Shown here: piece by piece, positions 1 through 15,850 of the stretch
Layout: every line of letters begins with the position of its first letter
Numbering within the stretch: position 1 is the first letter of the stretch
From: Entomortierella parvispora E1425
Taxonomy: Eukaryota > Fungi > Mortierellomycota
Direction of reading: 5' to 3'
Length of the DNA: 64,000 bases
Assembly: GCA_020891255.1 (NCBI GenBank)
Contig: BQFW01000011.1
Location: 930,001-994,000, forward strand
Translations under genes and position numbers: made by a program
Notes under the pieces: generated by a model
The model's database searches: none
Told to the model about the DNA's origin: nothing
Seen by the model: only the letters and a program-made list of their open reading frames with translations

Positions 1-1429
1 TGGCTCCTGGAAGTCTTCCTTGCTTTCGCATCCTTGGAGTAGGGCCGTGTTGATTCGGGAACAGCCTTTCCTGAGGTGGTTCCTGCTGGTCTTTTGCCTC
101 CAATGTCCGGCTTTGAGTTGCGTCTCTGAGCAGTCTTTCGTCTATAAGTAGAGGTCATTGTGTGAGTGCGAGTCGACTTTGTAAATATCATTCATAAACA
201 GTGCAAAAAAAAAAAAAAAACATCCGACTTTACCCAATGCTCTTGCGTTGACGAGAGCTACCGTCTCCATCGCTGGTTGCGACATTTTCAGACTCTGCTT
301 CTGAAGAATCGCTATCCGAGCCAGAGTCTGAGCTGTCATCGCTGCTGCCTCCCAAGTTCAAGGGCACATTAGGCACTTTGCCCGGCTGTTTGCCTCCAGT
401 CACGCTCCTGGCAGGAGTGGGCCAGGGAGGAAGGGTTGGACTTGGCATGGATGGCAATTTTTCAAATTCCTAAGGTTTTTTTTTGGAGCATGGGTGTCAG
501 CGTAAAGTACGAGCGAAAGCCATGGGGGATATCAACATAAACATGTACGTACCTCCAAATATTTGTGAAGTTGAGTGAAAGGTGGACTTGGTGGGCTCTG
601 ATGAAGGACGCCAAAAACAATAACAATGCAAGAACAAAAGGCGTTTCAGTACCATCTTCCAGGTGCATCCGTGAACCACACACACACATCAATTGACCAG
701 AGAACGGGAACTTACATAATAGAAATGGGGTCGGATGTTACCGTTGGGATGCGACGTTGTCACCGGAGTACCCTTTTCACGACTGTGGTGGATGGCCGAA
801 AAGGACAAGAGGATGGTCAAGACAATGGGTCAGTGACGGAAGAAGAGAAAAAGAGGAAAAACAGTAGCAGGGCAAGCCGACTGTGCGCCATGTGCTTGCA
901 GAAATCGAACGTGCGCCAACAAAAGAAGGACACGGACACTCCTGGTTGGTCCTTTGTGTTGCCTTCCTGTCCATGTGGAGGCTCTTTGTGTTCCCTTCCC
1001 TTCCTTCTTGCACCTTGCCACACAAAAAGGCAGGCCACGCTCAGTCTCCATTCTTTGTCAATTGCTCGAGGCACCGACTTTCCGCAAGGCTGACCCCCCC
1101 CCCCCCACATTGACAACGCTTCATTCTTCGCACTGCAGATAATGTCTGTAGAGAATGAATAATATAGCGATATTCTCCTTACAAAAAAGGGGCAAGGGCA
1201 TCAGAGGAGGAAAATCCCCTCCCCAGGCTGTGTGGGGTTTTCCTCTTCCATTACGGTCTGGGCCAATGTTGCACACAAATATGCTTGCAAAGGGGGAGCA
1301 AGGCATGAAAAACAAGAAACCACGCACTCTATAGCTTTTTTTCCTCAGCCAACAGCACGCCCAGACAATCCGAGCAATCGGTTTTGCCTTCCCACCCTCC
1401 CATTCATTCGTGGTATTCAGTTGCCACAT
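1..1429 (-). CDS. Hypothetical multi-exon protein, running off the left window edge; 5' end uncertain
   Basis: GT-AG junctions keep one open frame through exons ~1144-883, ~783-717, 597-553, 469-234 and 141-1 (...FCWRTFDFCKHMAH/REKGTPVTTSHPNGNIRPHFYY/SPPSPPFTQLHKYLE/EFEKLPSMPSP...RKSIG/RKTAQ...). Family not recognised. Confidence 0.45.
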
Positions 1430-2052
1430 GTCATCAAAAGGCGCTTGCGCCTGTAGTCTACCGGTTCACAAGTACTGTCTTGCATGGGCCATCCTGAGGA
1501 CTTGCGCGCGCAGTTTTTTGGGGTCGGAAACGGCGGGTTCAGGGTTGGCGGGGGTGGCGGCGGGAGGGCCAAAAGTCTTCCGTTGCCGCCGCCAAGTCCA
1601 AGGATGAAACTGCTCTTTTGACACCAGCCATTGGGGGATGGTATCGTCTGCCCATCGATTCATGGCGATATCCATCGAGCCCGCTTTACTCGTGTGCCGC
1701 ATGCTTCTTCGCGAAAGCTCTTTTTTTTTTTTTTTTTTTGGTCTTCGTGTGCCTTCATGCACCGATTCTCACGCTGCCCGGCCCCTTCTCTTCCCCTCCT
1801 AAAACCCTTTTTTCCCCTCTTTGTCTGCAGCCAACGATATTCTCGTCATTAACTGCAGTGGACAGATGGGCCATGAAATAGATCCAGATCATTGATCATG
1901 GTACCCATCTCTATCCCTATTCCCTATTTCTCTCTTCCTCTTTCTATTTTGTCCAGATGGCGTCCATAGATACTTTTTTCACGCCAAAAGATGTATTTCC
2001 CAAGAGCGAAGAATAAAAAAAAACATCAGAGGAAGATCTGAGATTGTTTTTG

Positions 2053-2448
2053 TTACCTTGACATGTGTGGGATCTGTGTTCCCGCAGCCCAACCTGTGAT
2101 AGTGGGCGGACATATTGGCACGACCCAGTCGAGTTTCATAGAGTGGATATCGTTGAGGTTGCCTCCGGTGGATGGGGATCGTTCGCGCGCTGGCCGATCC
2201 TTGAGTCCCCACTGTCGAGGGTTGAAGGTGAGGTACTCGTGACAGCCATGCATGGCCTCCGGACCCTGGTGCCCGCTTGCGATCCAGTTCTTTTTGAATT
2301 CAGCAATCTTTAGGTCGATATCGTCGTGGGCGATCGGATGGGCCGAGGTGGGGGTGTTGAGGGAGCTGGCGGTGGAGGAGAAGGCCATGATGGAGCTGGG
2401 ACTAGGGATAGAGGGGCTAGGTGTGGCCTCCTGGTCTTTCTTGCTCAT
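2053..2448 (-). CDS. Hypothetical ORF, possibly a first exon (of the gene at 1-1429 or of a separate gene)
   Basis: 131-aa ORF (MSKKDQEATP...LKIAEFKKNWIASGHQGP...) preceded by a pyrimidine-rich leader on its strand and ending at a possible AG|gtaac donor. I could not place a convincing downstream acceptor. Confidence 0.3.
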   Translation of the reverse strand: MSKKDQEATPSPSIPSPSSIMAFSSTASSLNTPTSAHPIAHDDIDLKIAEFKKNWIASGHQGPEAMHGCHEYLTFNPRQWGLKDRPARERSPSTGGNLNDIHSMKLDWVVPICPPTITGWAAGTQIPHMSR

Positions 2449-2789
2449 GGTCCCAAACAGGAGGAGCGGGACTCTCTTTTTTGTTTGTGTGGATAACGGA
2501 AGAGAGTGAGAAAAGACAAGGGAGGAGAAGGAGGAGGGAGGAAGGAGGCAAAATCACCCACAAAGGCAGGTAGGACGGGTGGGAAATAGAAGGAGGAGGA
2601 GGAGGAGGGAGCCCGGGCGATCGGAGAGGGAGAAAGAGCAACGACAATCAATGGTGGCCAAGGGTCAGTCCATGTGGGGGGTCCCCTTGGGATGGAATGG
2701 AAGGATCAGATTATGATGACGATGGAATGGAATGGACCGACAGACGCGTGTGATTAAGGCAGAGGAGGAGGTGGAGGAGGATGAGAAGG

Positions 2790-3469
2790 AGGATGAGTCG
2801 ATGGATGGATGGATGGATGAGTCGATGGAAGAAGAAAAGAAGAAGAAGAGGGGAAGGAGGAGAAGGAGAGAGGGAGAAGGAATGCGATGAATGGATAGAT
2901 TCCGGTCAAGGAGATGAATGACCTTGCGAAAAGCGACAATGAAAAGAGAAGAGAGAAAAGAGGATGAAGATGGAATTGAATCCAATGAAGACAAGAGAGA
3001 AATGAGAAATGAAATGAAATGAAATGAAATGAAATGAAATGAAGGGATGCAATAAGAGGGAGGGAGGTCGGATTGAAATGAATTGAATTGAATGATGACC
3101 AGCGGAGCAGAAAACAAATATGAAAAAATGGAAGTTTGGTGTGTGTGTATGTATGTACTGTATCATATATCTATCTGCATCTATGACATCTGTCCATCAT
3201 GGCTATTTCTCTGTAGAAGGGAGAAAAGAAGAAGATAGAGAGAGAGAAGAGAGAAGATAGAAGACAGAAAAGATAGAAGAGAGAGAGAGAGAGAACAAGA
3301 GAACAAGAAGAAGAACGGACAGACAACCCCCCGAGGAGGCCGTTTGTGTGGTCCATGGGGAGGGTGGTTCGTGTCCCTGTGGGTGTGGGTGTCCTGGTGT
3401 GTTGCATCCCTCTTCTTCTTTCCTCCTTCACTCGGTCGACTTGACTCTGCCCCACTTTACTTGATAGAA

Positions 3470-3504
<35 letters not shown>

Positions 3505-3590
3505 GACTACCCCGATCTGATCCAGGGGTGTGTGTGCTGTGCTGTGCTGTGCTGTGCTGTGCTGGTTCATTGTTCATTGTTCATTGTTCA
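2790..3590. repeat. Cluster of short tandem repeats: (GATG)n, (GAAAT)7, (GA)n, (GTGCT)n, (TTCATTG)n
   Basis: Read directly, e.g. GAAAT x7 at ~3006-3040, GA run at ~3466-3506, GTGCT run at ~3533-3562. Confidence 0.9.
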
Positions 3591-3983
3591 TGTTCCTGCT
3601 GCTTTGCCTTGTTTCTTTTGCTTTTGCTTCTTTGCTTGCAGGTAAGCTAAAGCACCTGCCCTAGCTAAGTGGCTATTAACTATCATACGTCTAACGTAGT
3701 AGAATAAAAGAAAGAGTCTCTTTTTTAACAACTGATCCGATCATCCATCACATCAGAGCCTCCATCAATTGGCCCGCCCCCTCTTTGCCCTTCTTTCTTG
3801 CACTTTCTTCACTCTCTTCATCGCGCCATCAAATCATCACTACGAGGTCCGACTCGGAGCCAATCGCGCGCATCAATTGGTGGCAAAAATGACTTTGTTT
3901 TTTTTTGTTTTTTGTAGTGTCTCTCTTGTCTCTATCTCTCTTCTCTCTCTTTTGTGGTCTGCCCCTCTCTCTCTCTCTCTGTG

Positions 3984-4125
<142 letters not shown>

Positions 4126-4982
4126 CAGGTCTGTCCTCAGGGCATAGAGTGGATGTCGTGTCCAGGTGTCGCATCAATGACGGACGCAGTGACGGATCTC
4201 CGTGTTTGTGTAAGCGCAGACGACCAGGACCAGGGGAGACAAGACGACTTTTTGACATTAAGGCCAGGGCACATGGATGAGCCAACCTCATCCTCTTGTC
4301 TCGTCCGGGCGACCCATCCAACAATTCCAAAGACCCCGATCCTGGAGAAGGCCAGGGAGGACCAGAGTACACCAACAGTCTCTGGGACACGACATGGGAC
4401 AGACACTCACGTACACACACACACACAAACACACAGAAAGAGAGAGAGAACAGGTCAGATTGATATCGGAATCTACGCACGATATCAACTTCACTGGTTG
4501 TGGTCAACCCGTCCTTCTCTTTACCGCGCCGTGCCGCGCCGTGGCCATATGGGAGCCAACAAAGGTTGTGCGTTTCCGGCTGTTTCCCCCCACAGGCGAC
4601 CTAACCCATCCATGCACTCCATGCAACCTTGTCCCTAATGCATCCACAACAGCAAACTCCTTCTTCTCCTCTTTCAGATCCATAGATCTCTTTGTTGCCG
4701 CGGTTCTTTCTCTTTCTCTCTCTCTCTTTCTTTCCCTCCCCGTTCCCTCCCCCTTCTCTCACTCCTCCACCCTATTCTTGTCCCTCCCGTCTGTCCTTAA
4801 CAGTTGGACGCTTCATCAACAACAGAACCGGCTTCTTTGAACGCCATCCACCCTAATTGCTATAATTCTTATCCTCCACTGTCCTCGTTACGTTTCTTTC
4901 TCCTTCCTAAAAAAAAAAAAAAAAAGAAAAAAAAAAAGCCCGCCTCTTTTTACTTTTGCCATCACTCTTTTTTTTTTTTGTC

Positions 4983-6105
4983 ATGAACACGGCCATCGTC
5001 CAGACCTCAAGGCAGGCGCCCTTGACAGCAGCATCAACAACCTCTCCAGAGTCTGGTCTCTCGACCAAAGTCAGTTTGCACAAATCCAATCAAAATCTGC
5101 AACCACACTCGCACCAGCACCTCCACCCCAATCACCCTCAGCAACAACATCACCATCATACTCAATATCAACAACATCAAAAATCCCTCTCCTCTGTCAG
5201 CGCCAGCTCGGCCACAGCCTCTTCTTCCTCTTCCTCAAATAACAATAACAACAACAGTAATAACGGCAACCATACCAATGGAACAGCACCTCTACAAAAC
5301 CACTTTTCATCTTCTCTCAAGAACAGGTCCTCTGTCTTCTTCAACACGTCCACCTCGTCCTTCTCCAACTACACAAAGTTTGGGTCGAGCTCACGCGATT
5401 TCTTGTATCACAGCAACAGTGCTTCGCGTCTTGCCTTCGCCACCTCGTACGACGGGTTCTTCTCCGACGAAGTGTATAATGTTGGTGGCGGTGGCAGCGA
5501 TGACGCTTTAATCACGGGCAGTGGGAGTGGTGGCATGGGAGGAATCATGGAGTTTGAGGACAGTCGGTACTACGAAGGACGGTATGAAGATCGAGAACAC
5601 GAATATGAGGAAGGCTCTTTTTACCGGCAGCACCAGCAGCAGCACCCATCCCAGCAACAACAACAACAGCAACAGCAGCAGCAACAACCTCACCATCAAA
5701 GTCAACAGCAAGACCATCCATCTTCACATCGGTCCCAACGTCACCTTCCTGGGAGTCAGAGCAAAGAAAACTTGCGGCAGTGGCAATTCCGTCTCTCAGA
5801 GGAACCAGCACCTTCCGAGCCGACCATCTTTGCAGGTCGACAACCTTCTTCCACAAAGGAGCGTCTCCCCTCCATCGATTCATTGTCGACTCTGTTTCGC
5901 GAAAACGAGGATGGTCTCCTCTACACCAGAACCGACAAAGACTACACGCAGCAGGAGCATTGGAGGTCCCCGATGCTCAAGACCCCTTCATCCTTGTCCT
6001 TGTCCTCCTCCTCCTCGCGTTCATCTGTACTCCAACGTGGAGGCCACGAGAGTCAGTCCTTTCGGCAAGAGAGTGGATCTCTGCAAGAATCCAAGGGGCA
6101 GCAGC

Positions 6106-6147
<42 letters not shown>

Positions 6148-8395
6148 TGCATCAACAACATCCACATCAACAGGCTCAGGAGGGTAAGGGGGTCAAGGAG
6201 TCAGGGGGGACTGAACATCTTTACAAGATTAAGCGCAAAAGCTTACAGCTGGAACTTCAGGACGAGTCCGAGAACTTCATGGACCTTGAGAACGAACATG
6301 AGCAGAGTGGGTCACCCGTGTCCCAGAATCAGGACTTTGGTCAGGATGCCATCCCAGATCAGGAGAAACCAAAGCCCAAGAGACGGAAAAGGGCTAGTCT
6401 GGAAGAACGCTCGACTGCAGCCAAAAAAACCACCCCACGAAAACAAAAGGAATCCGGACCTGGAGAGACTGTAGAGTTGGTGCCACAGGACCGCCATCAA
6501 CGACACCACCCGCAACAGCAGCAGTACTTTGGATCTGAATTGTCATCTACTCAGTTTAGTCATCCTGCCACCCTGCACCTGCCACCGGTTCATCCTCAGA
6601 GTCACCATTACGCGCAGCAAAATCCATACTCACAAGCAGCCATTGAACAGATCCCCATGCCACTGCAAACACACTCACACCAAGACCAGCACCCATATCC
6701 ACCCCAATACCAACCACAGTCTCGCCACCGTGCCCACGATCATGTCTCGTCCTCTTCTTCCTCGCTCTCCCTTTCGATTTCCTCTACACATTCAAGTAAT
6801 TTTATTACGGAGGAACAGTTCCTCTTGCTCGCCGAAGACTATTTGTTGTCGCTCTCTCCAAAAAAGAGAGAGAAGGCCCTGCTGTCTAATTCCATGTATC
6901 AAAAGATCCTCATGGTTTTGATCCAGCCAAAGAATACCCAGGTCTCGACCGCCCAGTTTCGGTTCTGGGCCAAAAAGATGTTTACGCTGTCCACCACCCC
7001 TACACACCACGTTGTTTGTCATGGAGGAAAGCCCGTTGCCACCAAAGAATGCCTGTACGATGTCCTTGTTTATTGTCATCGCAAGAGTTCCCATGGTGGT
7101 CGCGACAAGACGTCTGCTGAGGTAACGAGACAGTTCCACGCGGAGGTGGCGCGTCAGTGATTAGCTCATCCATGCTTGTCTAACTTCATGTTTTCATCCC
7201 TGCACTTTTTTTTTTTGTTGTTTGTGAATAGGTCCGACAGCACTATTCGTGGGTACCGAAAGAGTTGATAGCTCGGTTTGTCAAGCACTGCCCTCTTTGT
7301 CTTAGTAGACGAACTACACAGCCACGGTCAGCCTCCGGTGTCAATGCACTCTCTGCCTCGTCATCAGCGTCGTACTATTCGGGATACCGTCGAGGAGGTG
7401 CAGAGGACGAAGGCGATGATTTCGACAAGGATGAAGAACAGCATGGCCCGCCCGGCGAAGAGGAAGAAGGAGGATATGATGCTCAATCGCTACCATTACA
7501 TTACAGTGGGGATACAGTGCACCATCAGCAACAACCCGCCTTGGCCCATCCACAGCAATTACAGGGGCAGTTTTCTCATCCTCAGTCAGTCGCCCGCCCA
7601 GGATATGAGTCTTCACTTGCACATGGCCGGGATCATCACTTGCACCTGCATCCACAGCAGCAATACCATCCCGACCACAATTATTCCAACGGCCAGATGC
7701 AAAGCCCAGTACGAAGTACATCGGGTGAGGAGGAAGACGAAACACAGGAAGAGGCTGTCGACTTTTCGCCGAAGGGACTTGGGGGAGAAGAAGGAAGGAG
7801 AGGGGTGGAGACCCAAGGCGACTTGGCAAGCACTTTCACAGGAGAAGATCGTTCGTCCCAGGGCTTTCGTCCTGTTCTCTATCACCACCAAAAGAGCCAC
7901 TCTTTTTCACAGCATCCTCAGCACCATCACCAGCTTCACCACCACCTCCATCATGAGCCAGCCTCACCCTCTACCCCTATTGCGGTCGTTCATCCCAACG
8001 GCCACATCCTGCATGACCGCCATCCAATCCTGAACAGCGCTCGTCTCTTTGGACTTGATCAAGGTGTTGGCGCTCGAGGAGCTGGTGGAGTCGCGACATT
8101 GTCTGGGTTCCCAATGACCCCTTCACCCTCTTTTCATCACCGACCCCTCTCCTTATCGCCTCTTCATCTGAACACGACGGCATTTCGAACACGGATGATG
8201 CCTCATCTTCACTCTGGACTGACCACCAGTAGCTTGGATTCGCCTGTAGATCTAGAGTCGGATCAGAGCGGCGATGAAGAGGACGAGCGAGCGGAAGGTC
8301 GTCCAGAGAATGTCCATCAGGGCCAAAGCCTAGGAGACGAGGCCGCGGAGGAGAGTGGAGGGGAAGACGAAGACATGGATGCGGACGAGAACTAG
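4983..8395 (+). CDS. Large low-complexity (Q/H/S-rich) protein with an integrase zinc-binding (HHCC, Integrase_H2C2-like) domain; 2 exons
   Basis: Exon 1 4983-7121, intron 7122-7231 (gtaacg...gaatag), exon 2 7232-8395. The splice joins KECLYDVLVYCHRKSSHGGRDKTSAE/VRQHYSWVPKELIARFVKHCPLC, giving an H..H..C..C pattern. Confidence 0.8.
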
Positions 8396-10267: not shown

Positions 10268-11305
10268 ATGTCTGACAAAACGATCAAAGTCCCTGAGGAA
10301 GCAGATGCTACCGATGGACTGGTCATTGCCGCTCTTCACCTTGCTGTTCTGACCTATGTTACCCAAGGGGGTGTCCGATCTTACAAGGGTTTATTCGCCA
10401 AACTGATCGAGGCAGGTTTCGGCACCTTCAAAAAAATCGACGGCGTGTTCTGGACAGCCGTCGATGAGCCTTTTGAGCTCATAGCAATAGACAACTGCTA
10501 TCAAGCAACGAGGCAAACCTATTTGCAACTACGACAGACCGTGCTCAAGACGTCTTCCGTGGAGCAGGCGCAAGGCAGTCTCCTAGGAGAGTTTAGCTTG
10601 CCGAATGAAATGGTCCATTTATTCCACGGCAAGAAGATCTCGCGTTCTCTGATGCGCACCCACCACAAGGTGCCTCAAGAAATGACAGACTGCAGGGCTT
10701 CTATTGTGGGATGGTCTGAAGGTCAGGGAGCGATGTGTGATGGTGGGACTTCCTTGGCCAATTTTCTGGATGCCCATATGAACAAAAACTCTCGGCTGGC
10801 GGAGAGCCCCCTGTCTCCGTTCCTCTCCCTTGCAGGATTGGAATCCAACCCTAGTCTTGTTTTTGTTGTCCGCTTCGACAAGCCCGGCTCCACCTCTTTG
10901 GACGCTGCGGCTCCAATCATCTGCCCAGTGCTTGTGCAAACGCGACTGGTGGAAGAACCTGATTGCGAAGAAAGGGACGAGGCGTACAGAGCAATCCACC
11001 GTACCATTCGACAGTCCTGTGGACAGCATGGACATTATATCCATCTGCCCGTGGACCTGGTTGCAATCCCATCTGCGAAAGGCAGCTACTGTGTTAAGAA
11101 GGACTTGGCTTCTGAAGAACACGATGACAAGACATTGATCACGCTTGTGGTCGACACTGACAACATCTTTGACGTTTTCCGTGCACAATACAACATGGCT
11201 CTGGCGATTTTGAAAATGGCAGCCAAGGCTGTGACCGAGACCCAGAAAGAGGTCCAAGAGCTAGAAGATCTGAAGAAAAAAGCCTCGGGCGGAAATGGTT
11301 TATAA
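10268..11305 (+). CDS. Intronless hypothetical protein, 345 aa, globular-looking, family not recognised
   Basis: Single uninterrupted ATG-TAA ORF with normal amino-acid complexity and a predicted coiled C-terminus. Confidence 0.65.
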   Translation: MSDKTIKVPEEADATDGLVIAALHLAVLTYVTQGGVRSYKGLFAKLIEAGFGTFKKIDGVFWTAVDEPFELIAIDNCYQATRQTYLQLRQTVLKTSSVEQAQGSLLGEFSLPNEMVHLFHGKKISRSLMRTHHKVPQEMTDCRASIVGWSEGQGAMCDGGTSLANFLDAHMNKNSRLAESPLSPFLSLAGLESNPSLVFVVRFDKPGSTSLDAAAPIICPVLVQTRLVEEPDCEERDEAYRAIHRTIRQSCGQHGHYIHLPVDLVAIPSAKGSYCVKKDLASEEHDDKTLITLVVDTDNIFDVFRAQYNMALAILKMAAKAVTETQKEVQELEDLKKKASGGNGL

Positions 11306-11388
11306 CAAACTCGGTAGGAGCACACGGCGAGCGATCCCTTCCTATTCCTAGATGTGGCTTGGTCCCCCCTTATGATAATGGCAGGAGG

Positions 11389-11419
<31 letters not shown>

Positions 11420-11512: not shown

Positions 11513-11908
11513 CTAATACTTGTTCTCGGCAATAAAGGTCTTGATCTTGTCTTGGATTTCATCCCTGATCTCTCGGGCTTCTTGCAGGGGCTTGTTCTTG
11601 GGGTCAGTGATGCTCCAATCGACCATCTTGACACCAGGGACAAAAGGGCACGTCTCGCCACAGCCCATGGTCACGATCGTGCTGACGGTTTCTGCCAGCT
11701 CGGGTGTCAGTTTCTTGGGCGTGATGTTGGACAGATCAATGCCCACTTCCAACATGATCTCTCGGACAACATCGTGGACCTCGGATGCCGGTTGGGTGCC
11801 GGCAGAAATACCCTTCACAGTGTCTTGGGTTCTGTGCTTGTTGAAGAATGCTGCAGCCATTTGCGATCTTCCTGCGTTATGAACACAGGCAAACATGATG
11901 TCGGTCAT
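11513..11908 (-). CDS. arsC: Bacterial-type arsenate reductase ArsC (LMW-PTP fold, probably thioredoxin-coupled), 131 aa, intronless
   Basis: MTDIMFACVHNAGRSQMAAAFFN (CX5R P-loop), SAGTQP, EVGIDLS, TMGCGETCP (resolving cysteines), DW..TDP. It lies next to ACR3. Confidence 0.88.
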   Translation of the reverse strand: MTDIMFACVHNAGRSQMAAAFFNKHRTQDTVKGISAGTQPASEVHDVVREIMLEVGIDLSNITPKKLTPELAETVSTIVTMGCGETCPFVPGVKMVDWSITDPKNKPLQEAREIRDEIQDKIKTFIAENKY

Positions 11909-12658
11909 TTGGGGAAAATGGATGAGATTAGAAGCAGCAAGGGACTTGAAGTTTAGATGGAGAAGGATTGACTGTTCAATGTAGGCAGACCGACGAGAGT
12001 TGTAAGAGAACCAAAGAAAAATGGAAGGAGGAGAAAGAAGATAAAAAGAGGCCACAAGGGTTCTCCTGAGCTTTTAAAGTAGACCCCCCCCCCCTCCCTC
12101 TCCACGTGTGAGTCAGAGTAGGACGATGTACATGTACTCACAAGGGGCTGGACCTTTTGCTGTCTTTGGACAAGCCATTTCCCAGGTGTAAGACTACGAA
12201 AAGAACAGATTCGCTCCCTTTTTTTGTAGCAAACTTCCCTTTTGGGGAAGGCAAACACCCTCCAGGTTTTTCTGAATTGACAGACCGTGGTCGCACAGGC
12301 CAGCAACCCTTCGGGTTTTTGATTTTTTTGATTTTTTTGATTTTTTTTTTTTAGATTCATAGAGGTTTACGGTGATCCAATCCAGGTCGAATGATATGGT
12401 AGCTGCCGCCATTCTTCTTCTCGCTCTTTCTTTCTTTCTCCTTTTCCCATCTCTCCCTCTCTTCTCCCTTCACCACACTCTCATCCATCCATCTCTCTTT
12501 GCACCTTTGGCGCCCTTGACAGCCCTTCAGAAAACTCGAGGCAAGTTGGCAAATCGTGTGATGGCCAGAATAAACTGATTCGGACTGAAAAGTAAGAAAG
12601 GAATGTTACGCTGACGCTTTCGTATTGGATCCTTCCACTCCCGGTCCACAGGAAAACA
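11909..12658. promoter_or_regulatory. Putative bidirectional promoter shared by arsC and ACR3
   Basis: 750 bp between divergent start codons. Contains abutting CACGTG (12103-12108) and TGAGTCA (12109-12115), and a short (TTTTTTGA)n repeat at ~12316-12350. Confidence 0.5.
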
Positions 12659-13765
12659 ATGTGGGGCCTCTCTCTTATCGATACACTCTTGCCGCTGTGG
12701 ATCATCCTCTGCATGGTGGGGGGAGTGCTGATCGGCTATTATGTACCCAATGTCGAGACGGTCCTTAACGCCGCCAAGTTTGCAGATGTATCGGTCCCTG
12801 TCGCCATCGGCCTGCTCGTGATGATGTACCCGGTCTTTTGTCGCATCAAGTACGAAGAATTGGGGGCGCTCTTCAAGGGCAAGTTCATGAAAGGTCAGCT
12901 CCTCTTTTCCTTGGTGGTCAATTGGATCATCGCTCCTCTCTTGATGGTGGCCTTGGCGTGGATGACCCTGCCCGATCTACCAGACTATAGGAGTGGCGTC
13001 ATCCTGGTCGGTGTGGCCCGCTGCATTGCCATGGTCCTGATTTGGAACCAGCTCGCAGGGGGCAACCAAGAGTTTTGCGCTGTTACAGTGGCTATCAACT
13101 CTCTCTTGCAAATCGTCCTGTACGGTCCGTTGGCCTACTTTTATGTCGTCATCGTCGGCAAAGGGACCACGTTCCATATCGATATGTGGGTCATTGTCAG
13201 GAGCGTCCTCATCTACATGGGGATCCCGCTGTTGGCTGGCTTCCTGACCCGCTGGTGCCTGCGTCGTTTCGAGTGGTACCACAAAACGTTTGTCCCTACC
13301 GTCGGGAAACTCTCCTTGATAGCGTTGCTCTATGTCATCGTTGTCATGTTTGCTCTTCAGGGCCACGAGATTGTGAATGATATTGGGAACGTGTTGCGAA
13401 CAGCCGTGCCGTTGATTCTTTATTTCGTGGTTATTTTTGCTGGTGTCCTGGCATGGTGTTTGATCACTAAGGTCCCCTATGACATTGCTGTGCCACAGTG
13501 TTTTACGGCGGCCTCCAACAACTTTGAGCTTGCCATCGCCATTGCTGTGGGTACATATGGCGTCCAGTCCAAGGAAGCGCTTGCGGCAACGATAGGCCCC
13601 CTGATCGAAGTGCCGATGCTCTTGTCATTGGTATATGTGATCAAGTACGTCCGTGGCCGCTGGTACGCGATCGATCCAGCTGAATCCGAAAAGGGCGAGG
13701 ATGGTTCAAGTGAAGGCATCCCAACACCCCCATCCCAACACAAGTCTGAAGATTACTTGCCATAA
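12659..13765 (+). CDS. ACR3: ACR3-family arsenite efflux transporter (BART superfamily), 368 aa, intronless
   Basis: About 10 hydrophobic segments with the signatures GLLVMMYP, SLVVNWIIAP, GVARCIAMVLIWN, ASNNFELAIA and GPLIEVP. Confidence 0.95.
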   Translation: MWGLSLIDTLLPLWIILCMVGGVLIGYYVPNVETVLNAAKFADVSVPVAIGLLVMMYPVFCRIKYEELGALFKGKFMKGQLLFSLVVNWIIAPLLMVALAWMTLPDLPDYRSGVILVGVARCIAMVLIWNQLAGGNQEFCAVTVAINSLLQIVLYGPLAYFYVVIVGKGTTFHIDMWVIVRSVLIYMGIPLLAGFLTRWCLRRFEWYHKTFVPTVGKLSLIALLYVIVVMFALQGHEIVNDIGNVLRTAVPLILYFVVIFAGVLAWCLITKVPYDIAVPQCFTAASNNFELAIAIAVGTYGVQSKEALAATIGPLIEVPMLLSLVYVIKYVRGRWYAIDPAESEKGEDGSSEGIPTPPSQHKSEDYLP

Positions 13766-14199: not shown

Positions 14200-15850
14200 T
14201 CCCTCGCACGCCCATCACCCATTGAGAGCAACGAAGTCCTGCTCCGAATATTTTCGAAGGTCATCGCGAGGCGTCCATGCCGATGATGGAATCTTGTTGC
14301 CATAGAACTGATCCAAAGCAGGGTTCGCTTTGATGTCGGCAATCTTGGAGCATTGAGAAATTTGGAGACCCATGTCGCCATGGCCACGAGCATCACTACT
14401 GGCAAAATCCCTGCACCCAGGGTACACCGAAAAGACTATGATCCAGCGTGGTCCAAAAGCAGTGGCAAAAAGCTGATGGGTGTCTTGGATCAAGTGAACA
14501 GCCGGGACCGCTGTCGTATTCGACTTCGTGTCACAAAGCTTACCATGTATGTCGAAAGCTGGTGGGTCGATGACATTGCATCTCAGACTCTGTTCAATGC
14601 CGTGCACTTGACGAGTCTGACATGTCTTGGCTCGAACTGAGCACGGACTATTATATGTCGAATGGGTATTAGATCAGTGTCCGAACCTGCTGTCGCTTTC
14701 GATGAATGGCTGCAGACTCGGTCTTCCCGAGTTTCATAAACACAGAACGAGGCTCAAAGTACTTGGATCGAGCACCAAGTGCCGCTCAGGCTCCTGACCA
14801 CCACGATCTCTCGGCATCACGAATCTACGAATGTCATCGTGGAAACTCATGGATCTTTTTTCCGAAACTTGGGGAATTGACGAGTATCTCCATGGTCTAT
14901 ATCCAATCTATGCTTTCGACGGAATTGATGACGCATCCTGAGGATGAACACTTTGGCATGACCTTGTCTTTGGGCATGCCGAAGGTTAAAAACACTGCAC
15001 CTCCACCCTATATCATATTTTTGCCAGCTATGAACATTCTTTTTGCCTATCTCGGTCGTGTCTGTCCTGAACTACAGGAGCTATCAGTCATGGTCCATTA
15101 TACAAATCGCTATTTACCCCAGATCCTTTCGCTGTTGGCTCGTCTAATACATTTGCGAACGGCTAGAACTTCGCTGTTGGGTAGACACAGACAATTATCT
15201 CGACATGGATCCAGTTGGACAACATCAAGGGCGAGATACTCCCACTGCACGAAAAAAGTGCAGTCCATTCCATCATCGTCTGTTGTCCCCTTTTCAGTCT
15301 CTCACCATGACTGGACACAAGAAACCAATCAAGGATCTCAGAGATTACATCGAAGCCGCACGGCCAATACGATGGCGCAGGGCAAGAAAAGAGCAGACGA
15401 GTTGAAAATGAAATGGAAGAACATTCAGAATGATCTGAACAGCCAACGCCGGAGAGTGGAACAGCAACAAAAGAAGAACAACTACCGCACAGAGCACAAT
15501 CGAGATATCCCAATGGTGGATGGTCTAGTCGACTTTTAAAGGTCTTGGGATCCAATTTCGATATCGAAGCATGTCTCCAAGCAATGGCCTGGCGGCTCCA
15601 ACAGTGGCAGGGAAGAGGGGACGAAACTTGAGTCGAACCCAAGGACGAGGGCTTGCAGCCATGGAAACACATGGAGCAGTTCATGTTCAACTTTTCTCTC
15701 CACAGCTACCGCAGAAAAGATATAACGATGCTGATGCGCCGTGCTGGCGAAATAGGCAAAAGTCTTGGTCAAATGCGGCCCGATATTGAGTTCATATGTC
15801 GCGTCAAGTATATGTATCTCTATATAGTACCAGAGACGTGTTTATCGCAT
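14200..15850 (+). pseudogene. Decayed F-box/leucine-rich-repeat (RNI-like) gene
   Basis: F-box-like PIESNEVLLRIF is followed by an in-frame TGA (14284-14286) and another stop (14638-14640). LRR-like fragments VEWVLDQCPNLLSLSMNGC, LFAYLGRVCPELQELS and GLQPWKHMEQF...MRPDIEFIC lie in different frames. Confidence 0.55.

What the first reader, a model, noticed from the sequence alone, without database searches (positions are those of the whole stretch)
11513..13765. Head-to-head arsC-ACR3 detoxification module, convergent with the yeast ACR2/ACR3 layout
A reductase (As(V) to As(III)) and an exporter share a 750-bp divergent promoter, making a complete two-step resistance pathway. S. cerevisiae has the same head-to-head layout for ACR2/ACR3 (established), but with a non-homologous reductase. 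Here a fungal-looking ACR3 is paired with a bacterial-fold ArsC and no regulator gene is adjacent. Inference: an independently assembled chimeric arsenic cluster, and possibly a precursor or alternative to ACR3-ArsC fusions. This is my best candidate for an undescribed system in the window.
Basis: partly seen in the sequence, partly recalled or inferred. Interest (0 to 1): 0.75.

Follow-up and report, generated by a model that had tools for sequence, protein, structure and literature searches.

The report
Fungal ArsC–ACR3 arsenic resistance gene pair
A soil fungus of the Mortierella family carries, back to back, a bacterial-type arsenate reductase gene and a eukaryote-type arsenite pump gene; this is a rearranged, slimmed-down copy of an arsenic-resistance cluster shared by many related fungi, so it is real but mechanistically ordinary.

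Summary
A 131-aa LMW-phosphatase-type ArsC (11513-11908, minus strand) and a 368-aa ACR3 arsenite pump (12659-13765, plus strand) are divergent, with exactly 750 bp between their start codons. The window lies on a 2.1-Mb contig of a 38.9-Mb Mortierellaceae genome, and each gene is single-copy there.

- **Chimeric origin holds.** ArsC nests among bacterial ArsCs, and ACR3 nests among eukaryotic ACR3s.
- **Not assembled here.** ArsC and ACR3 lie within 3.5 kb of each other in 9 of 11 ArsC loci examined (Mortierellaceae genera plus one Mucorales-like contig). An ArsH gene, or in L. elongata only its remnant, joins them in five of the nine.
- **Head-to-head is a minority layout.** Only the window and Podila verticillata have it. 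The layout fits an inversion, and in this genome ArsH sits on another contig.
- **The link to fusions is supported.** Both proteins are sister to the matching halves of ACR3-ArsC fusion proteins in Smittium and dictyostelids (99/96 and 100/99 support). Which state came first is unresolved.

Both genes are under strong purifying selection (dN/dS 0.05-0.10) and keep their catalytic residues. Co-regulation is untested: a promoter motif shared by relatives is absent from this intergenic region.

A similar three-gene cluster is already published for green algae. I found nothing published for Mucoromycota. I rate it a new member of a known kind, of moderate interest.

The parts
11513..11908 (-). ArsC: 131-aa LMW-PTP-fold arsenate reductase with a single exon. 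The stop codon is at 11513-11515 and the start ATG at 11906-11908.
   Evidence: Pfam LMWPc 7.4e-18. It is identical to P0001. C8-X5-R14-S15, C83, C87 and D102-P103 are invariant in 28 relatives. The best solved relatives are 3t38 (6.4e-29) and 3rh0. dN/dS against relatives is 0.08-0.10.
12659..13765 (+). ACR3 arsenite efflux permease: 368 aa, with an uninterrupted coding region.
   Evidence: TIGR00832 380 bits against a cut-off of 282.8. Pfam SBF 1.2e-49. Cys122 in the RCIAMV motif is in 91/91 aligned sequences and Glu317 in IEVP is in 89/91. dN/dS is 0.05-0.06.
11909..12658 (.). The 750-bp region between the two start codons, a putative bidirectional control region. GC is 0.457 against 0.491 for the window.
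   Evidence: Sequence and composition. That it acts as a shared promoter is an inference.
12541..12651 (+). Predicted 5'UTR intron of ACR3. It runs from a GC donor at 12541 (an alternative GT donor lies at 12592), through a CTGAC branch site, to an AG acceptor at 12650-12651, 7 nt before the ATG.
   Evidence: Alignment A2 of ACR3 upstream regions from 8 Mortierellaceae. Donor (GTAAGT in relatives), CTAAC-like branch site and acceptor are conserved just upstream of the ATG, while the surrounding intergenic DNA is not. No transcript evidence was available.
12420..12500 (+). Pyrimidine-rich (CT, CCATCCATC) tract, probably the core promoter and first non-coding exon region of ACR3.
   Evidence: It is alignable across relatives. 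The k-mer GATGGATGGA is present in 6 of 9 ACR3 upstream regions, against a shuffle maximum of 3.
12103..12115 (.). CACGTG E-box abutting a TGAGTCA AP-1-like site, about 200 bp upstream of the ArsC ATG. This is a weak candidate regulatory site.
   Evidence: AP-1-like sites also lie 181 bp and 336 bp upstream of ArsC in P. verticillata and Mortierella sp. AM989. There are 4 sites in 17.3 kb of ars intergenic DNA (0.23/kb) against 0.07/kb over whole loci. The numbers are small.
12053..12146 (.). Two copies of CACAAGGG, at 12053 and 12139. They are degenerate relatives of a motif found upstream of ArsC in Gamsiella, P. verticillata and L. exigua.
   Evidence: Chance expectation is about 0.02 per copy in 750 bp. 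Function is unknown.

Best explanation
This is a working two-step arsenate detoxification pair in a Mortierellaceae fungus. ArsC is a bacterial-origin LMW-phosphatase-fold reductase with a three-cysteine relay. It most resembles the thioredoxin-coupled Corynebacterium ArsC1' class. It reduces cytosolic As(V) to As(III). ACR3 is a eukaryote-type permease that keeps the invariant Cys in the RCIAMV motif and the near-invariant Glu in IEVP, the two positions I recall as essential in Acr3. It exports As(III).

The pair was not built in this genome. It is a reduced, rearranged descendant of an older zygomycete ars cluster (ArsC, ArsH, ACR3). The head-to-head orientation fits an inversion involving ArsC, shared with or paralleled in Podila verticillata. 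ArsH now lies on another chromosome.

The same ArsC and ACR3 lineages occur fused into one protein in Smittium and in dictyostelids, so the functional coupling is ancient.

Shown here: gene identity, intact catalytic residues, purifying selection, conserved linkage, and concordant phylogenies. Inferred: enzymatic activity, thioredoxin as the reductant, the inversion scenario, and co-regulation from the 750-bp region.
For: - **Family assignment:**
- **Catalytic residues:** invariant.
- **Purifying selection:** dN/dS is 0.08-0.10 for ArsC and 0.05-0.06 for ACR3, with saturated dS.
- **Host-like genes:** composition matches the host, ACR3 has a conserved 5'UTR intron, and the contig is 2.1 Mb in a 20-contig genome.
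- **Linkage in relatives**:
  - A. ambigua and M. alpina: tandem ArsC>ACR3>.
  - L. elongata: tandem, with an ArsH pseudogene remnant between the genes.
  - Dissophora and a Mucorales-like contig: ArsC> <ArsH ACR3>.
  - L. gamsii: <ArsH ArsC> ACR3>.
  - Mortierella sp. AM989: <ArsH ArsC> <SPX ACR3>.
  - P. verticillata: divergent, like the window.
- **No flank synteny** with any relative, so the linkage persists through rearrangement.
- **ArsC tree:** Mortierellaceae 95/92; plus Mucorales-like 96/85; plus the fusion domains of Smittium and dictyostelids 99/96; all nested in bacterial ArsC 95/94.
- **ACR3 tree:** Mortierellaceae plus the same fusions 100/99, inside a eukaryote clade separated 100/100 from the sampled bacterial ACR3.
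- **ArsH in this genome:** on contig C6, at 347 bits against a cut-off of 292.
- **Trx class:** Cg_ArsC1' and the mycobacterial ACR3-ArsC fusions are assigned to the thioredoxin class in PMC6514093.
Against: - There are no expression or activity data.
- The bipartite motif RYAACC-N5-GGTACTCRTT recurs in ars promoters of eight relatives, but it is absent from the window's intergenic region. Shared arsenic-responsive control is therefore not supported by that footprint.
- ArsC scores far below the curated cut-offs of the named NCBIfam ArsC equivalogs (55-65 bits against 157-215). Its reductant is inferred from similarity to 3t38 and from cysteine spacing only.
- The bacterial ACR3 sample was chosen by neighbourhood to ArsC relatives, not by ACR3 similarity. 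In its favour, all named proteins among the top 120 ACR3 hits are eukaryotic.
- The inversion scenario is a parsimony argument with no close outgroup.
Confidence: 0.8

Rival explanations
1. One reading: the two genes were brought together independently in this lineage. On this view the cluster is a de novo chimeric assembly convergent with yeast ACR2/ACR3, and head-to-head orientation is its defining design.
For: The layout in the window is divergent, as in yeast. The two genes have different deep origins, bacterial for ArsC and eukaryotic for ACR3.
Against: ArsC-ACR3 linkage is present in at least eight other Mortierellaceae loci and in a Mucorales-like contig, mostly in other orientations. 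Both gene trees show the same clade, including fused versions, so the association predates this lineage.
Confidence: 0.05
2. The pair is a fission product. An ancestral ACR3-ArsC fusion gene, as in Smittium, dictyostelids, Ramicandelaber and many bacteria, was split in Mucoromycota and the pieces were then rearranged. This is a sub-hypothesis about polarity and is compatible with the functional reading.
For: Fused forms are the sister group in both trees. Further out lie a Ramicandelaber fusion and a bacterial Koribacter fusion.
Against: In all split loci ArsC lies upstream of ACR3, or on the other strand. It is never directly downstream, as a simple split would leave it. The Mucorales-like and Dissophora clusters have ArsH between the genes. 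Standalone metagenomic ArsCs also sit among the outgroups. Polarity is therefore unresolved.
Confidence: 0.35
3. The genes are linked only by descent. Each has its own promoter and the head-to-head arrangement is an incidental by-product of an inversion, with no shared regulation.
For: - The relatives' conserved promoter motif is missing from the window.
- Orientation varies freely among genera.
- The predicted ACR3 5'UTR exon and intron occupy the proximal ~240 bp, so the control regions could be separate.
- The related Cg_ArsC1' is reported as constitutive (PMC6514093).
Against: Linkage survives complete loss of flank synteny and several rearrangements, which suggests selection for proximity. 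Weak AP-1-like sites recur upstream of ArsC in the three closest loci.
Confidence: 0.4
4. The ArsC-like gene is a protein tyrosine phosphatase or has some other role unrelated to arsenic, and sits next to ACR3 by chance.
For: The Pfam family is the LMW phosphotyrosine phosphatase family. Scores lie below the NCBIfam ArsC equivalog cut-offs.
Against: - The extra Cys pair C83/C87, typical of disulfide-relay ArsCs, is invariant.
- The nearest solved structures are all arsenate reductases.
- The gene is repeatedly linked to ACR3 and ArsH, and is fused to ACR3 in sister lineages.
Confidence: 0.04
5. Recent bacterial transfer of an ars operon fragment, or bacterial contamination of the assembly.
For: ArsC's closest non-eukaryotic relatives are bacterial at 50-60% identity, and bacterial loci often have ACR3 next to or fused with ArsC.
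Against: - ACR3 is only 41-50% identical to those bacterial neighbours, against 52-68% to other eukaryotes.
- The contig is 2.1 Mb and the flanking ORFs match eukaryotic families: sybindin and arrestin by Pfam, and eukaryote-only clusters for the ORF at 10268-11305 in the protein atlas.
- Composition is host-like and ACR3 has a conserved spliceosomal 5'UTR intron.
- Orthologues occur in more than 25 Mortierellaceae assemblies.
Confidence: 0.01

Closest known systems
Green-algal arsBHC-type arsenic neighbourhood (ACR3 + ArsH + ArsC) in Chromochloris, Coccomyxa and Klebsormidium (Foflonker & Blaby-Haas 2020, PMC7826186)
   Same: It is a eukaryotic cluster of the same three families. ACR3 is of the eukaryote type and ArsC is bacterial-like. 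Gene content varies between species, including two-gene versions.
   Different: It is in fungi, not algae. In my tree the algal and plant ACR3 form a separate clade from the Mortierellaceae ACR3. The paper reports algal ArsCs as closer to assorted bacteria than to each other, whereas the fungal ArsCs are monophyletic. The window itself lacks ArsH at the locus.
Saccharomyces cerevisiae ACR1(YAP8)-ACR2-ACR3 cluster
   Same: The reductase and ACR3 are transcribed divergently from a shared intergenic region (PMC9041338). The two-step logic is the same: reduce As(V), then export As(III).
   Different: The yeast reductase Acr2 is a Cdc25/rhodanese-type enzyme (from my own knowledge), not LMW-PTP-fold. 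Yeast has the Yap8 regulator next door and a Yap8 element in the promoter. Neither was found here. Head-to-head orientation is not conserved in the fungal family studied here.
Bacterial ars operons with LMWP ArsC and Acr3, and ACR3-ArsC fusion proteins of Mycobacterium/Mycolicibacterium (PMC6514093)
   Same: ArsC belongs to the same LMWP three-cysteine lineage as the thioredoxin-dependent Cg_ArsC1' class. ArsC is adjacent to or fused with ACR3 in many bacterial loci.
   Different: There is no ArsR repressor and no operon. The ACR3 partner is of eukaryotic descent, is 41-50% identical to the bacterial neighbours, and has a spliceosomal 5'UTR intron.
Eukaryotic ACR3-LMWP fusion proteins (Smittium culicis/angustum, Acytostelium, Heterostelium, Ramicandelaber)
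   Same: The Smittium and dictyostelid fusions are the closest non-Mucoromycota relatives of both window proteins. Their ACR3 halves are 61-68% identical and their ArsC halves 56-64%, and they are sister in both trees. The Ramicandelaber halves are more distant, at 55% and 42%, and lie further out in both trees.
   Different: Here there are two separate genes on opposite strands rather than one polypeptide.

Membership tests
ACR3 family arsenite efflux transporter (TIGR00832 / Pfam SBF) | Whole-protein HMM score above the curated cut-off | tested here: met
   380 bits against a cut-off of 282.8. Pfam SBF 1.2e-49.
ACR3 family arsenite efflux transporter (TIGR00832 / Pfam SBF) | Conserved Cys (R-C-I-A-M-V motif) and conserved Glu (I-E-V-P motif). 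I recall from the literature that these are essential in Acr3. | tested here: met
   Cys122 is in 91/91 and Glu317 in 89/91 aligned ACR3 sequences. That they are essential is from memory, not tested.
ACR3 family arsenite efflux transporter (TIGR00832 / Pfam SBF) | As(III) export activity and ten-helix topology | not tested
   No solved ACR3 relative was found by sequence. No structure prediction was run. Activity needs an experiment.
LMW-PTP-fold arsenate reductase, thioredoxin-coupled three-cysteine class (Cg_ArsC1'-like) | LMWPc fold with a C-X5-R-(S/T) P-loop and an Asp-Pro general acid | tested here: met
   Pfam LMWPc 7.4e-18. C8, R14, S15, D102 and P103 are invariant in 28 sequences.
LMW-PTP-fold arsenate reductase, thioredoxin-coupled three-cysteine class (Cg_ArsC1'-like) | Two further cysteines for the disulfide relay, aligned with those of a characterised Trx-coupled enzyme | tested here: met
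   C83 and C87 are invariant. They align with the GCGDVCP cysteines of 3t38, and C8 aligns with its P-loop Cys. That 3t38 is Cg_ArsC1' is from memory. The Trx class assignment of Cg_ArsC1' is from PMC6514093.
LMW-PTP-fold arsenate reductase, thioredoxin-coupled three-cysteine class (Cg_ArsC1'-like) | Arsenate reduction with Trx/TrxR/NADPH | not testable with these tools
   Needs an enzyme assay.
NCBIfam equivalogs TIGR02691 (pI258-type Trx ArsC) and TIGR02689 (Grx-type LMWP ArsC) | Score above the curated equivalog cut-off | tested here: not met
   55.7 against 174.3 and 64.6 against 157.6 bits. It is therefore not a member of those two named subfamilies, only of the wider LMWP ArsC group.
Yeast-type ACR cluster (Yap8-Acr2-Acr3) | Divergent reductase/ACR3 genes with a shared intergenic region | tested here: met
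   The genes are on opposite strands with 750 bp between the ATGs. The yeast layout is given in PMC9041338.
Yeast-type ACR cluster (Yap8-Acr2-Acr3) | Cdc25/rhodanese-type Acr2 reductase | tested here: not met
   The reductase here is LMWPc.
Yeast-type ACR cluster (Yap8-Acr2-Acr3) | Adjacent bZIP regulator and a Yap8 response element in the promoter | tested here: not met
   No transcription-factor domain was found in the large ORFs between about 3.8 and 24 kb of the window. There is no TGATTAAT/TTAATAA-type site, only one generic TGAGTCA. The ORF-based search could miss spliced genes.
arsBHC-type three-gene cluster (Synechocystis, green algae; here also Mucoromycota relatives) | ACR3, ArsH and ArsC adjacent | tested here: not met
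   In the window ArsH is absent from the locus, and the genome's ArsH is on contig C6. The feature is met in the relatives L005, L093, L094 and L100, and as a remnant in L092.
ACR3-ArsC fusion proteins | Both domains in one polypeptide | tested here: not met
   There are two genes on opposite strands. Each is sister to the corresponding fusion half.

The most novel reading that the evidence does not exclude
The ArsC-ACR3 (with or without ArsH) unit is a cohesive eukaryotic 'ars module'. On this reading it has moved horizontally among early-diverging fungi (Mortierellomycotina, Mucorales, Kickxellomycotina) and into dictyostelid amoebae. It switches repeatedly between a fused protein and separate clustered genes. 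Even when split, ArsC works in physical partnership with ACR3 to hand As(III) directly to the pump.
Probability: 0.2. Interest if true: 0.55.

Novelty: new member of a known kind. Interest (0 to 1): 0.35.

Why it matters
The finding documents a non-metabolic, stress-resistance gene cluster in early-diverging fungi. The cluster combines a bacterial-origin enzyme with a eukaryotic transporter and has stayed linked through many rearrangements.

Together with the fused versions in Smittium and dictyostelids, it gives a natural series (fused, tandem, divergent, unlinked). That series could be used to study why functionally coupled genes cluster or fuse in eukaryotes.

Practically, it predicts that Mortierellaceae, which are common soil and rhizosphere fungi, reduce arsenate and export arsenite. 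That bears on arsenic speciation in soils. Mechanistically it adds nothing new to known ars systems.

Tried and rejected
- **ArsH remnant in the window.** I found only a 35-aa, E~0.01 hit at about 14675-14779 (minus strand), downstream of ACR3. It is not convincing.
- **Flank synteny.** There is none between the 64-kb window and any relative locus, so the inversion cannot be anchored by neighbours.
- **Promoter motif search.** RYAACC-N5-GGTACTCRTT is clear in relatives but absent from the window's intergenic region. Yap8/Yap1-type sites are absent too. AP-1 and E-box enrichment rests on small numbers.
- **SPX-domain neighbours.** SPX genes lie next to the cluster in M. alpina and Mortierella sp. 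AM989, but they share no detectable homology with each other, so this is probably coincidence.
- **Other arsenic genes nearby.** The genome's ArsB/CitMHS-like gene and its ArsH are both on contig C6, unlinked to the window on C11 and about 1.3 Mb apart from each other.
- **Neighbouring ORF 10268-11305.** It has no Pfam hit. The protein atlas gives only fungal hypothetical proteins and low-confidence nuclease-like folds, so it is not a recognisable regulator.
- **PDB sequence search for ACR3.** No hit.
- **Literature.** Four searches found no description of a Mucoromycota ars cluster or of the eukaryotic ACR3-LMWP fusions. A further search for PDB code 3T38 found nothing, so the identity of that entry as Cg_ArsC1' rests on my memory.
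- **Earlier scan notes.** A word search found nothing.
Full report
**What is there**

The window is part of a 2.1-Mb contig (G000:C11) of a 38.9-Mb, 20-contig genome.

On the minus strand, 11513-11908 encodes a 131-aa protein. It is identical to P0001 and starts at the ATG at 11908, not at the upstream GTG of the raw ORF. It matches Pfam LMWPc at 7.4e-18.

On the plus strand, 12659-13765 encodes a 368-aa protein. It scores 380 bits on the ACR3 equivalog TIGR00832, whose cut-off is 282.8.

The genes are divergent, and their start codons are exactly 750 bp apart. Each is single-copy in the genome.

**Whose genome**

The best hits of both proteins are from Mortierellaceae: Podila, Linnemannia, Mortierella, Dissophora, Haplosporangium and others. 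Identities are 69-87% for ArsC and 72-90% for ACR3.

Several results rule out contamination or a recent transfer:
- Flanking ORFs match eukaryotic families. Sybindin and arrestin are found by Pfam, and the ORF at 10268-11305 matches eukaryote-only clusters in the protein atlas.
- GC and GC3 of the two genes match the host.
- ACR3 carries a predicted spliceosomal intron in its 5'UTR. Its donor, branch site and acceptor are conserved across eight genera just upstream of the ATG, while the surrounding intergenic DNA is not conserved.

**Are the proteins competent?**

ArsC has the C8-X5-R14-S15 phosphate loop, the D102-P103 acid, and two further cysteines, C83 and C87. All are invariant in an alignment of 28 fungal and bacterial relatives.

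Its closest solved relatives are all arsenate reductases, the best being 3t38 at 6.4e-29. The three cysteines align with those of that chain. From memory, 3t38 is Corynebacterium glutamicum ArsC1'. PMC6514093 assigns that enzyme to the thioredoxin/thioredoxin-reductase class, together with the mycobacterial ACR3-ArsC fusions.

ArsC does not reach the cut-offs of the NCBIfam pI258-type or glutaredoxin-type equivalogs. I therefore file it only in the wider LMWP ArsC group, with thioredoxin as the inferred reductant.

ACR3 keeps Cys122 in the RCIAMV motif (91/91 sequences) and Glu317 in IEVP (89/91).

Against orthologues, dN/dS is 0.08-0.10 for ArsC and 0.05-0.06 for ACR3, with dS above 1. Both genes are under strong purifying selection, and the compared lineages are old.

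**Is the linkage particular to this genome? No.**

I fetched loci around orthologues and mapped the genes by tblastn. The arrows below show gene direction.

| Locus | Organism | Layout |
|---|---|---|
| L001 | Actinomortierella ambigua | ArsC> ACR3> (tandem) |
| L002 | Mortierella alpina | ArsC> ACR3> (tandem) |
| L092 | Linnemannia elongata | ArsC> ACR3> (tandem), with a frameshifted ArsH remnant between them |
| L093 | Dissophora globulifera | ArsC> <ArsH ACR3> |
| L094 | Linnemannia gamsii | <ArsH ArsC> ACR3> |
| L005 | Mortierella sp. AM989 | <ArsH ArsC> <SPX ACR3> |
| L006/L007 | Podila verticillata | Divergent, like the window |
| L003 | Gamsiella | ArsC with ArsH and an ArsB-like permease; no ACR3 nearby |
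| L008 | L. exigua | ArsC alone |
| L095 | Benniella | ACR3 alone |
| L100 | Logan contig, Mucorales-like | ArsC> <ArsH ACR3>, with gaps of only 3 and 85 bp |

The ACR3 on L100 is 90% identical to that of the Mucorales fungus Halteromyces.

ArsC and ACR3 therefore lie within 3.5 kb of each other in 9 of 11 ArsC loci. ArsH, or its remnant, is part of the cluster in five of these nine. Head-to-head ArsC/ACR3 is the minority state.

None of the relatives' flanking genes has a match anywhere in the 64-kb window. The module has stayed together while everything around it changed.

In this genome ArsH (347 bits, above its cut-off) is on contig C6, and an ArsB-like gene is 1.3 Mb further along C6.

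A single inversion of the ArsC-ArsH block of the Dissophora/Mucorales-type cluster, followed by relocation of ArsH, would give the window's layout. This is a parsimony inference, not a demonstration.

**Origins**

*ArsC tree* (careful; the quick tree agrees):
- Mortierellaceae form a clade (95/92).
- That clade joins the Mucorales-like sequences (96/85).
- It then joins the C-terminal LMWP domains of the ACR3-ArsC fusion proteins of Smittium and of the dictyostelids Acytostelium and Heterostelium (99/96).
- The whole group is nested among bacterial ArsCs, including a Koribacter fusion (95/94).

*ACR3 tree* (careful; quick):
- Mortierellaceae plus the N-terminal halves of the same Smittium and dictyostelid fusions form a clade (100/99).
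- Its sister holds Halteromyces, the Logan contig, and Kickxellomycotina including the Ramicandelaber fusion (99/95).
- All of this sits inside a eukaryote clade with chytrids, plants and algae, separated 100/100 from the bacterial ACR3s that neighbour ArsC relatives.

All named proteins among the top 120 ACR3 hits are eukaryotic. The bacterial ACR3s are only 41-50% identical.

The two genes have also travelled together, fused or split, since before Mortierellaceae diversified.

Whether fusion or clustering came first is unresolved. Fusions dominate the near outgroups. However, in split loci ArsC never lies directly downstream of ACR3, as a simple fission would leave it.

Dictyostelid sequences nested in a fungal clade point to eukaryote-to-eukaryote transfer.

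**Regulation**

Nothing here tests co-regulation directly.

The ACR3-proximal ~240 bp of the 750-bp region holds a CT-rich tract and the predicted 5'UTR intron. The intron runs from 12541 (a GC donor) or 12592 (a GT donor) to 12651. About 500 bp are left as possible shared control DNA.

A bipartite element, RYAACC-N5-GGTACTCRTT, recurs in ars promoters of eight relatives. It is about 490-530 bp upstream of ACR3 in four genera. The window's intergenic region has no copy.

The window has instead:
- two CACAAGGG copies, at 12053 and 12139;
- a CACGTG-TGAGTCA pair at 12103-12115.

AP-1-like sites also occur upstream of ArsC in the two closest loci, but the counts are small.

No Yap8-type element was found, and no transcription-factor domain was found in neighbouring large ORFs.

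**Comparison with what is known**

- *Yeast.* ACR2 and ACR3 are divergently transcribed from a shared Yap8-bound promoter (PMC9041338). The layout resemblance is real, but the reductase family, the regulator and the promoter element all differ.
- *Green algae.* A three-gene ACR3/ArsH/ArsC neighbourhood has been described in Chromochloris, Coccomyxa and Klebsormidium (PMC7826186). The Mucoromycota cluster is the fungal counterpart, apparently of separate descent.
- *Bacteria.* Operons with LMWP ArsC and Acr3, and mycobacterial ACR3-ArsC fusions, are well known (PMC6514093).
- *Gaps in the literature.* Four literature searches found no description of the Mucoromycota cluster or of the eukaryotic fusions.

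**Verdict**

This is a real, conserved and almost certainly functional arsenate-detoxification pair. It is a reduced and inverted member of a fungal ars cluster, not a novel system and not a local invention.

I rate it a new member of a known kind. Its interest is moderate and lies mainly in the evolutionary series from fused to split to unlinked.

Noticed in passing
L101:455-7425 (Smittium angustum): The ACR3-ArsC fusion gene (6001-7425, plus strand) sits head-to-head with a 1575-aa ABCC-type transporter that has a TMD0 domain (455-5281, minus strand). This is the kind of transporter that includes yeast Ycf1. It may be a second arsenic-related pairing.
   Followed up: no
L003:4725-9184 (Gamsiella multidivaricata; same in L004): Here ArsC is flanked by a divergent 627-aa ArsB/CitMHS-family permease and a convergent ArsH, with no ACR3 within 8 kb. 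The cluster appears to have a different transporter partner.
   Followed up: partly
L092:6793-7086 (Linnemannia elongata): A frameshifted ArsH pseudogene remnant lies between ArsC and ACR3. It shows that at least this 'tandem two-gene' locus derives from a three-gene cluster.
   Followed up: yes
L100:2041-4345 (Logan run SRR33086945, GC 39%): A very compact ArsC> <ArsH ACR3> cluster, with intergenic gaps of 3 and 85 bp. Its ACR3 is 90% identical to that of Halteromyces radiatus (Mucorales), so the cluster extends beyond Mortierellaceae.
   Followed up: partly
L002:9004, L005:7406/10919/11020, L092:7469, L093:7375/7618, L094:5938/7512, L003:9387, L008:7766, L095:7722: The bipartite motif RYAACC-N5-GGTACTCRTT recurs in the promoters of ars genes in eight Mortierellaceae. 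The exact core occurs at about 1 per kb in ars intergenic DNA against about 0.07 per kb elsewhere in the loci. It is a candidate arsenic-responsive element and is absent from the window's own intergenic region.
   Followed up: partly
P0158, P0160 (Acytostelium, Heterostelium): Dictyostelid ACR3-ArsC fusion proteins nest inside a fungal clade in both domain trees. This suggests fungus-to-amoeba gene transfer.
   Followed up: partly
P0300 (Chaetothyriales sp., partial): An ascomycete-labelled ACR3-ArsC fusion whose ArsC half groups with Actinomycetota and whose ACR3 half sits on a very long branch. It is either an independent transfer or assembly contamination.
   Followed up: no
L093:2918-6391 (Dissophora globulifera): The public gene model merges an Rrn7-like gene with the ArsC ORF into one 689-aa product. 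tblastn shows a normal 131-aa ArsC at 5996-6388, so this is probably an annotation artefact.
   Followed up: partly
window 10268-11305 (+): A 345-aa intronless ORF lies tail-to-tail with ArsC. It has no Pfam hit. The protein atlas places it with fungal hypothetical proteins and gives low-confidence PD-(D/E)XK or Rpn-nuclease-like structural neighbours.
   Followed up: partly
window 14675-14779 (-): A weak 35-aa similarity to ArsH residues 65-96 (E about 0.01 in a 7-kb search space) lies about 0.9 kb downstream of ACR3. It could be a decayed ArsH trace or chance.
   Followed up: no
window 11384-11416 and 12318-12352: There is a long poly(A) run about 100 bp beyond the ArsC stop codon, and a GATTTTTTT x3 repeat plus a poly(T) run inside the intergenic region. 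These low-complexity tracts may mark nucleosome-free promoter or terminator regions.
   Followed up: no
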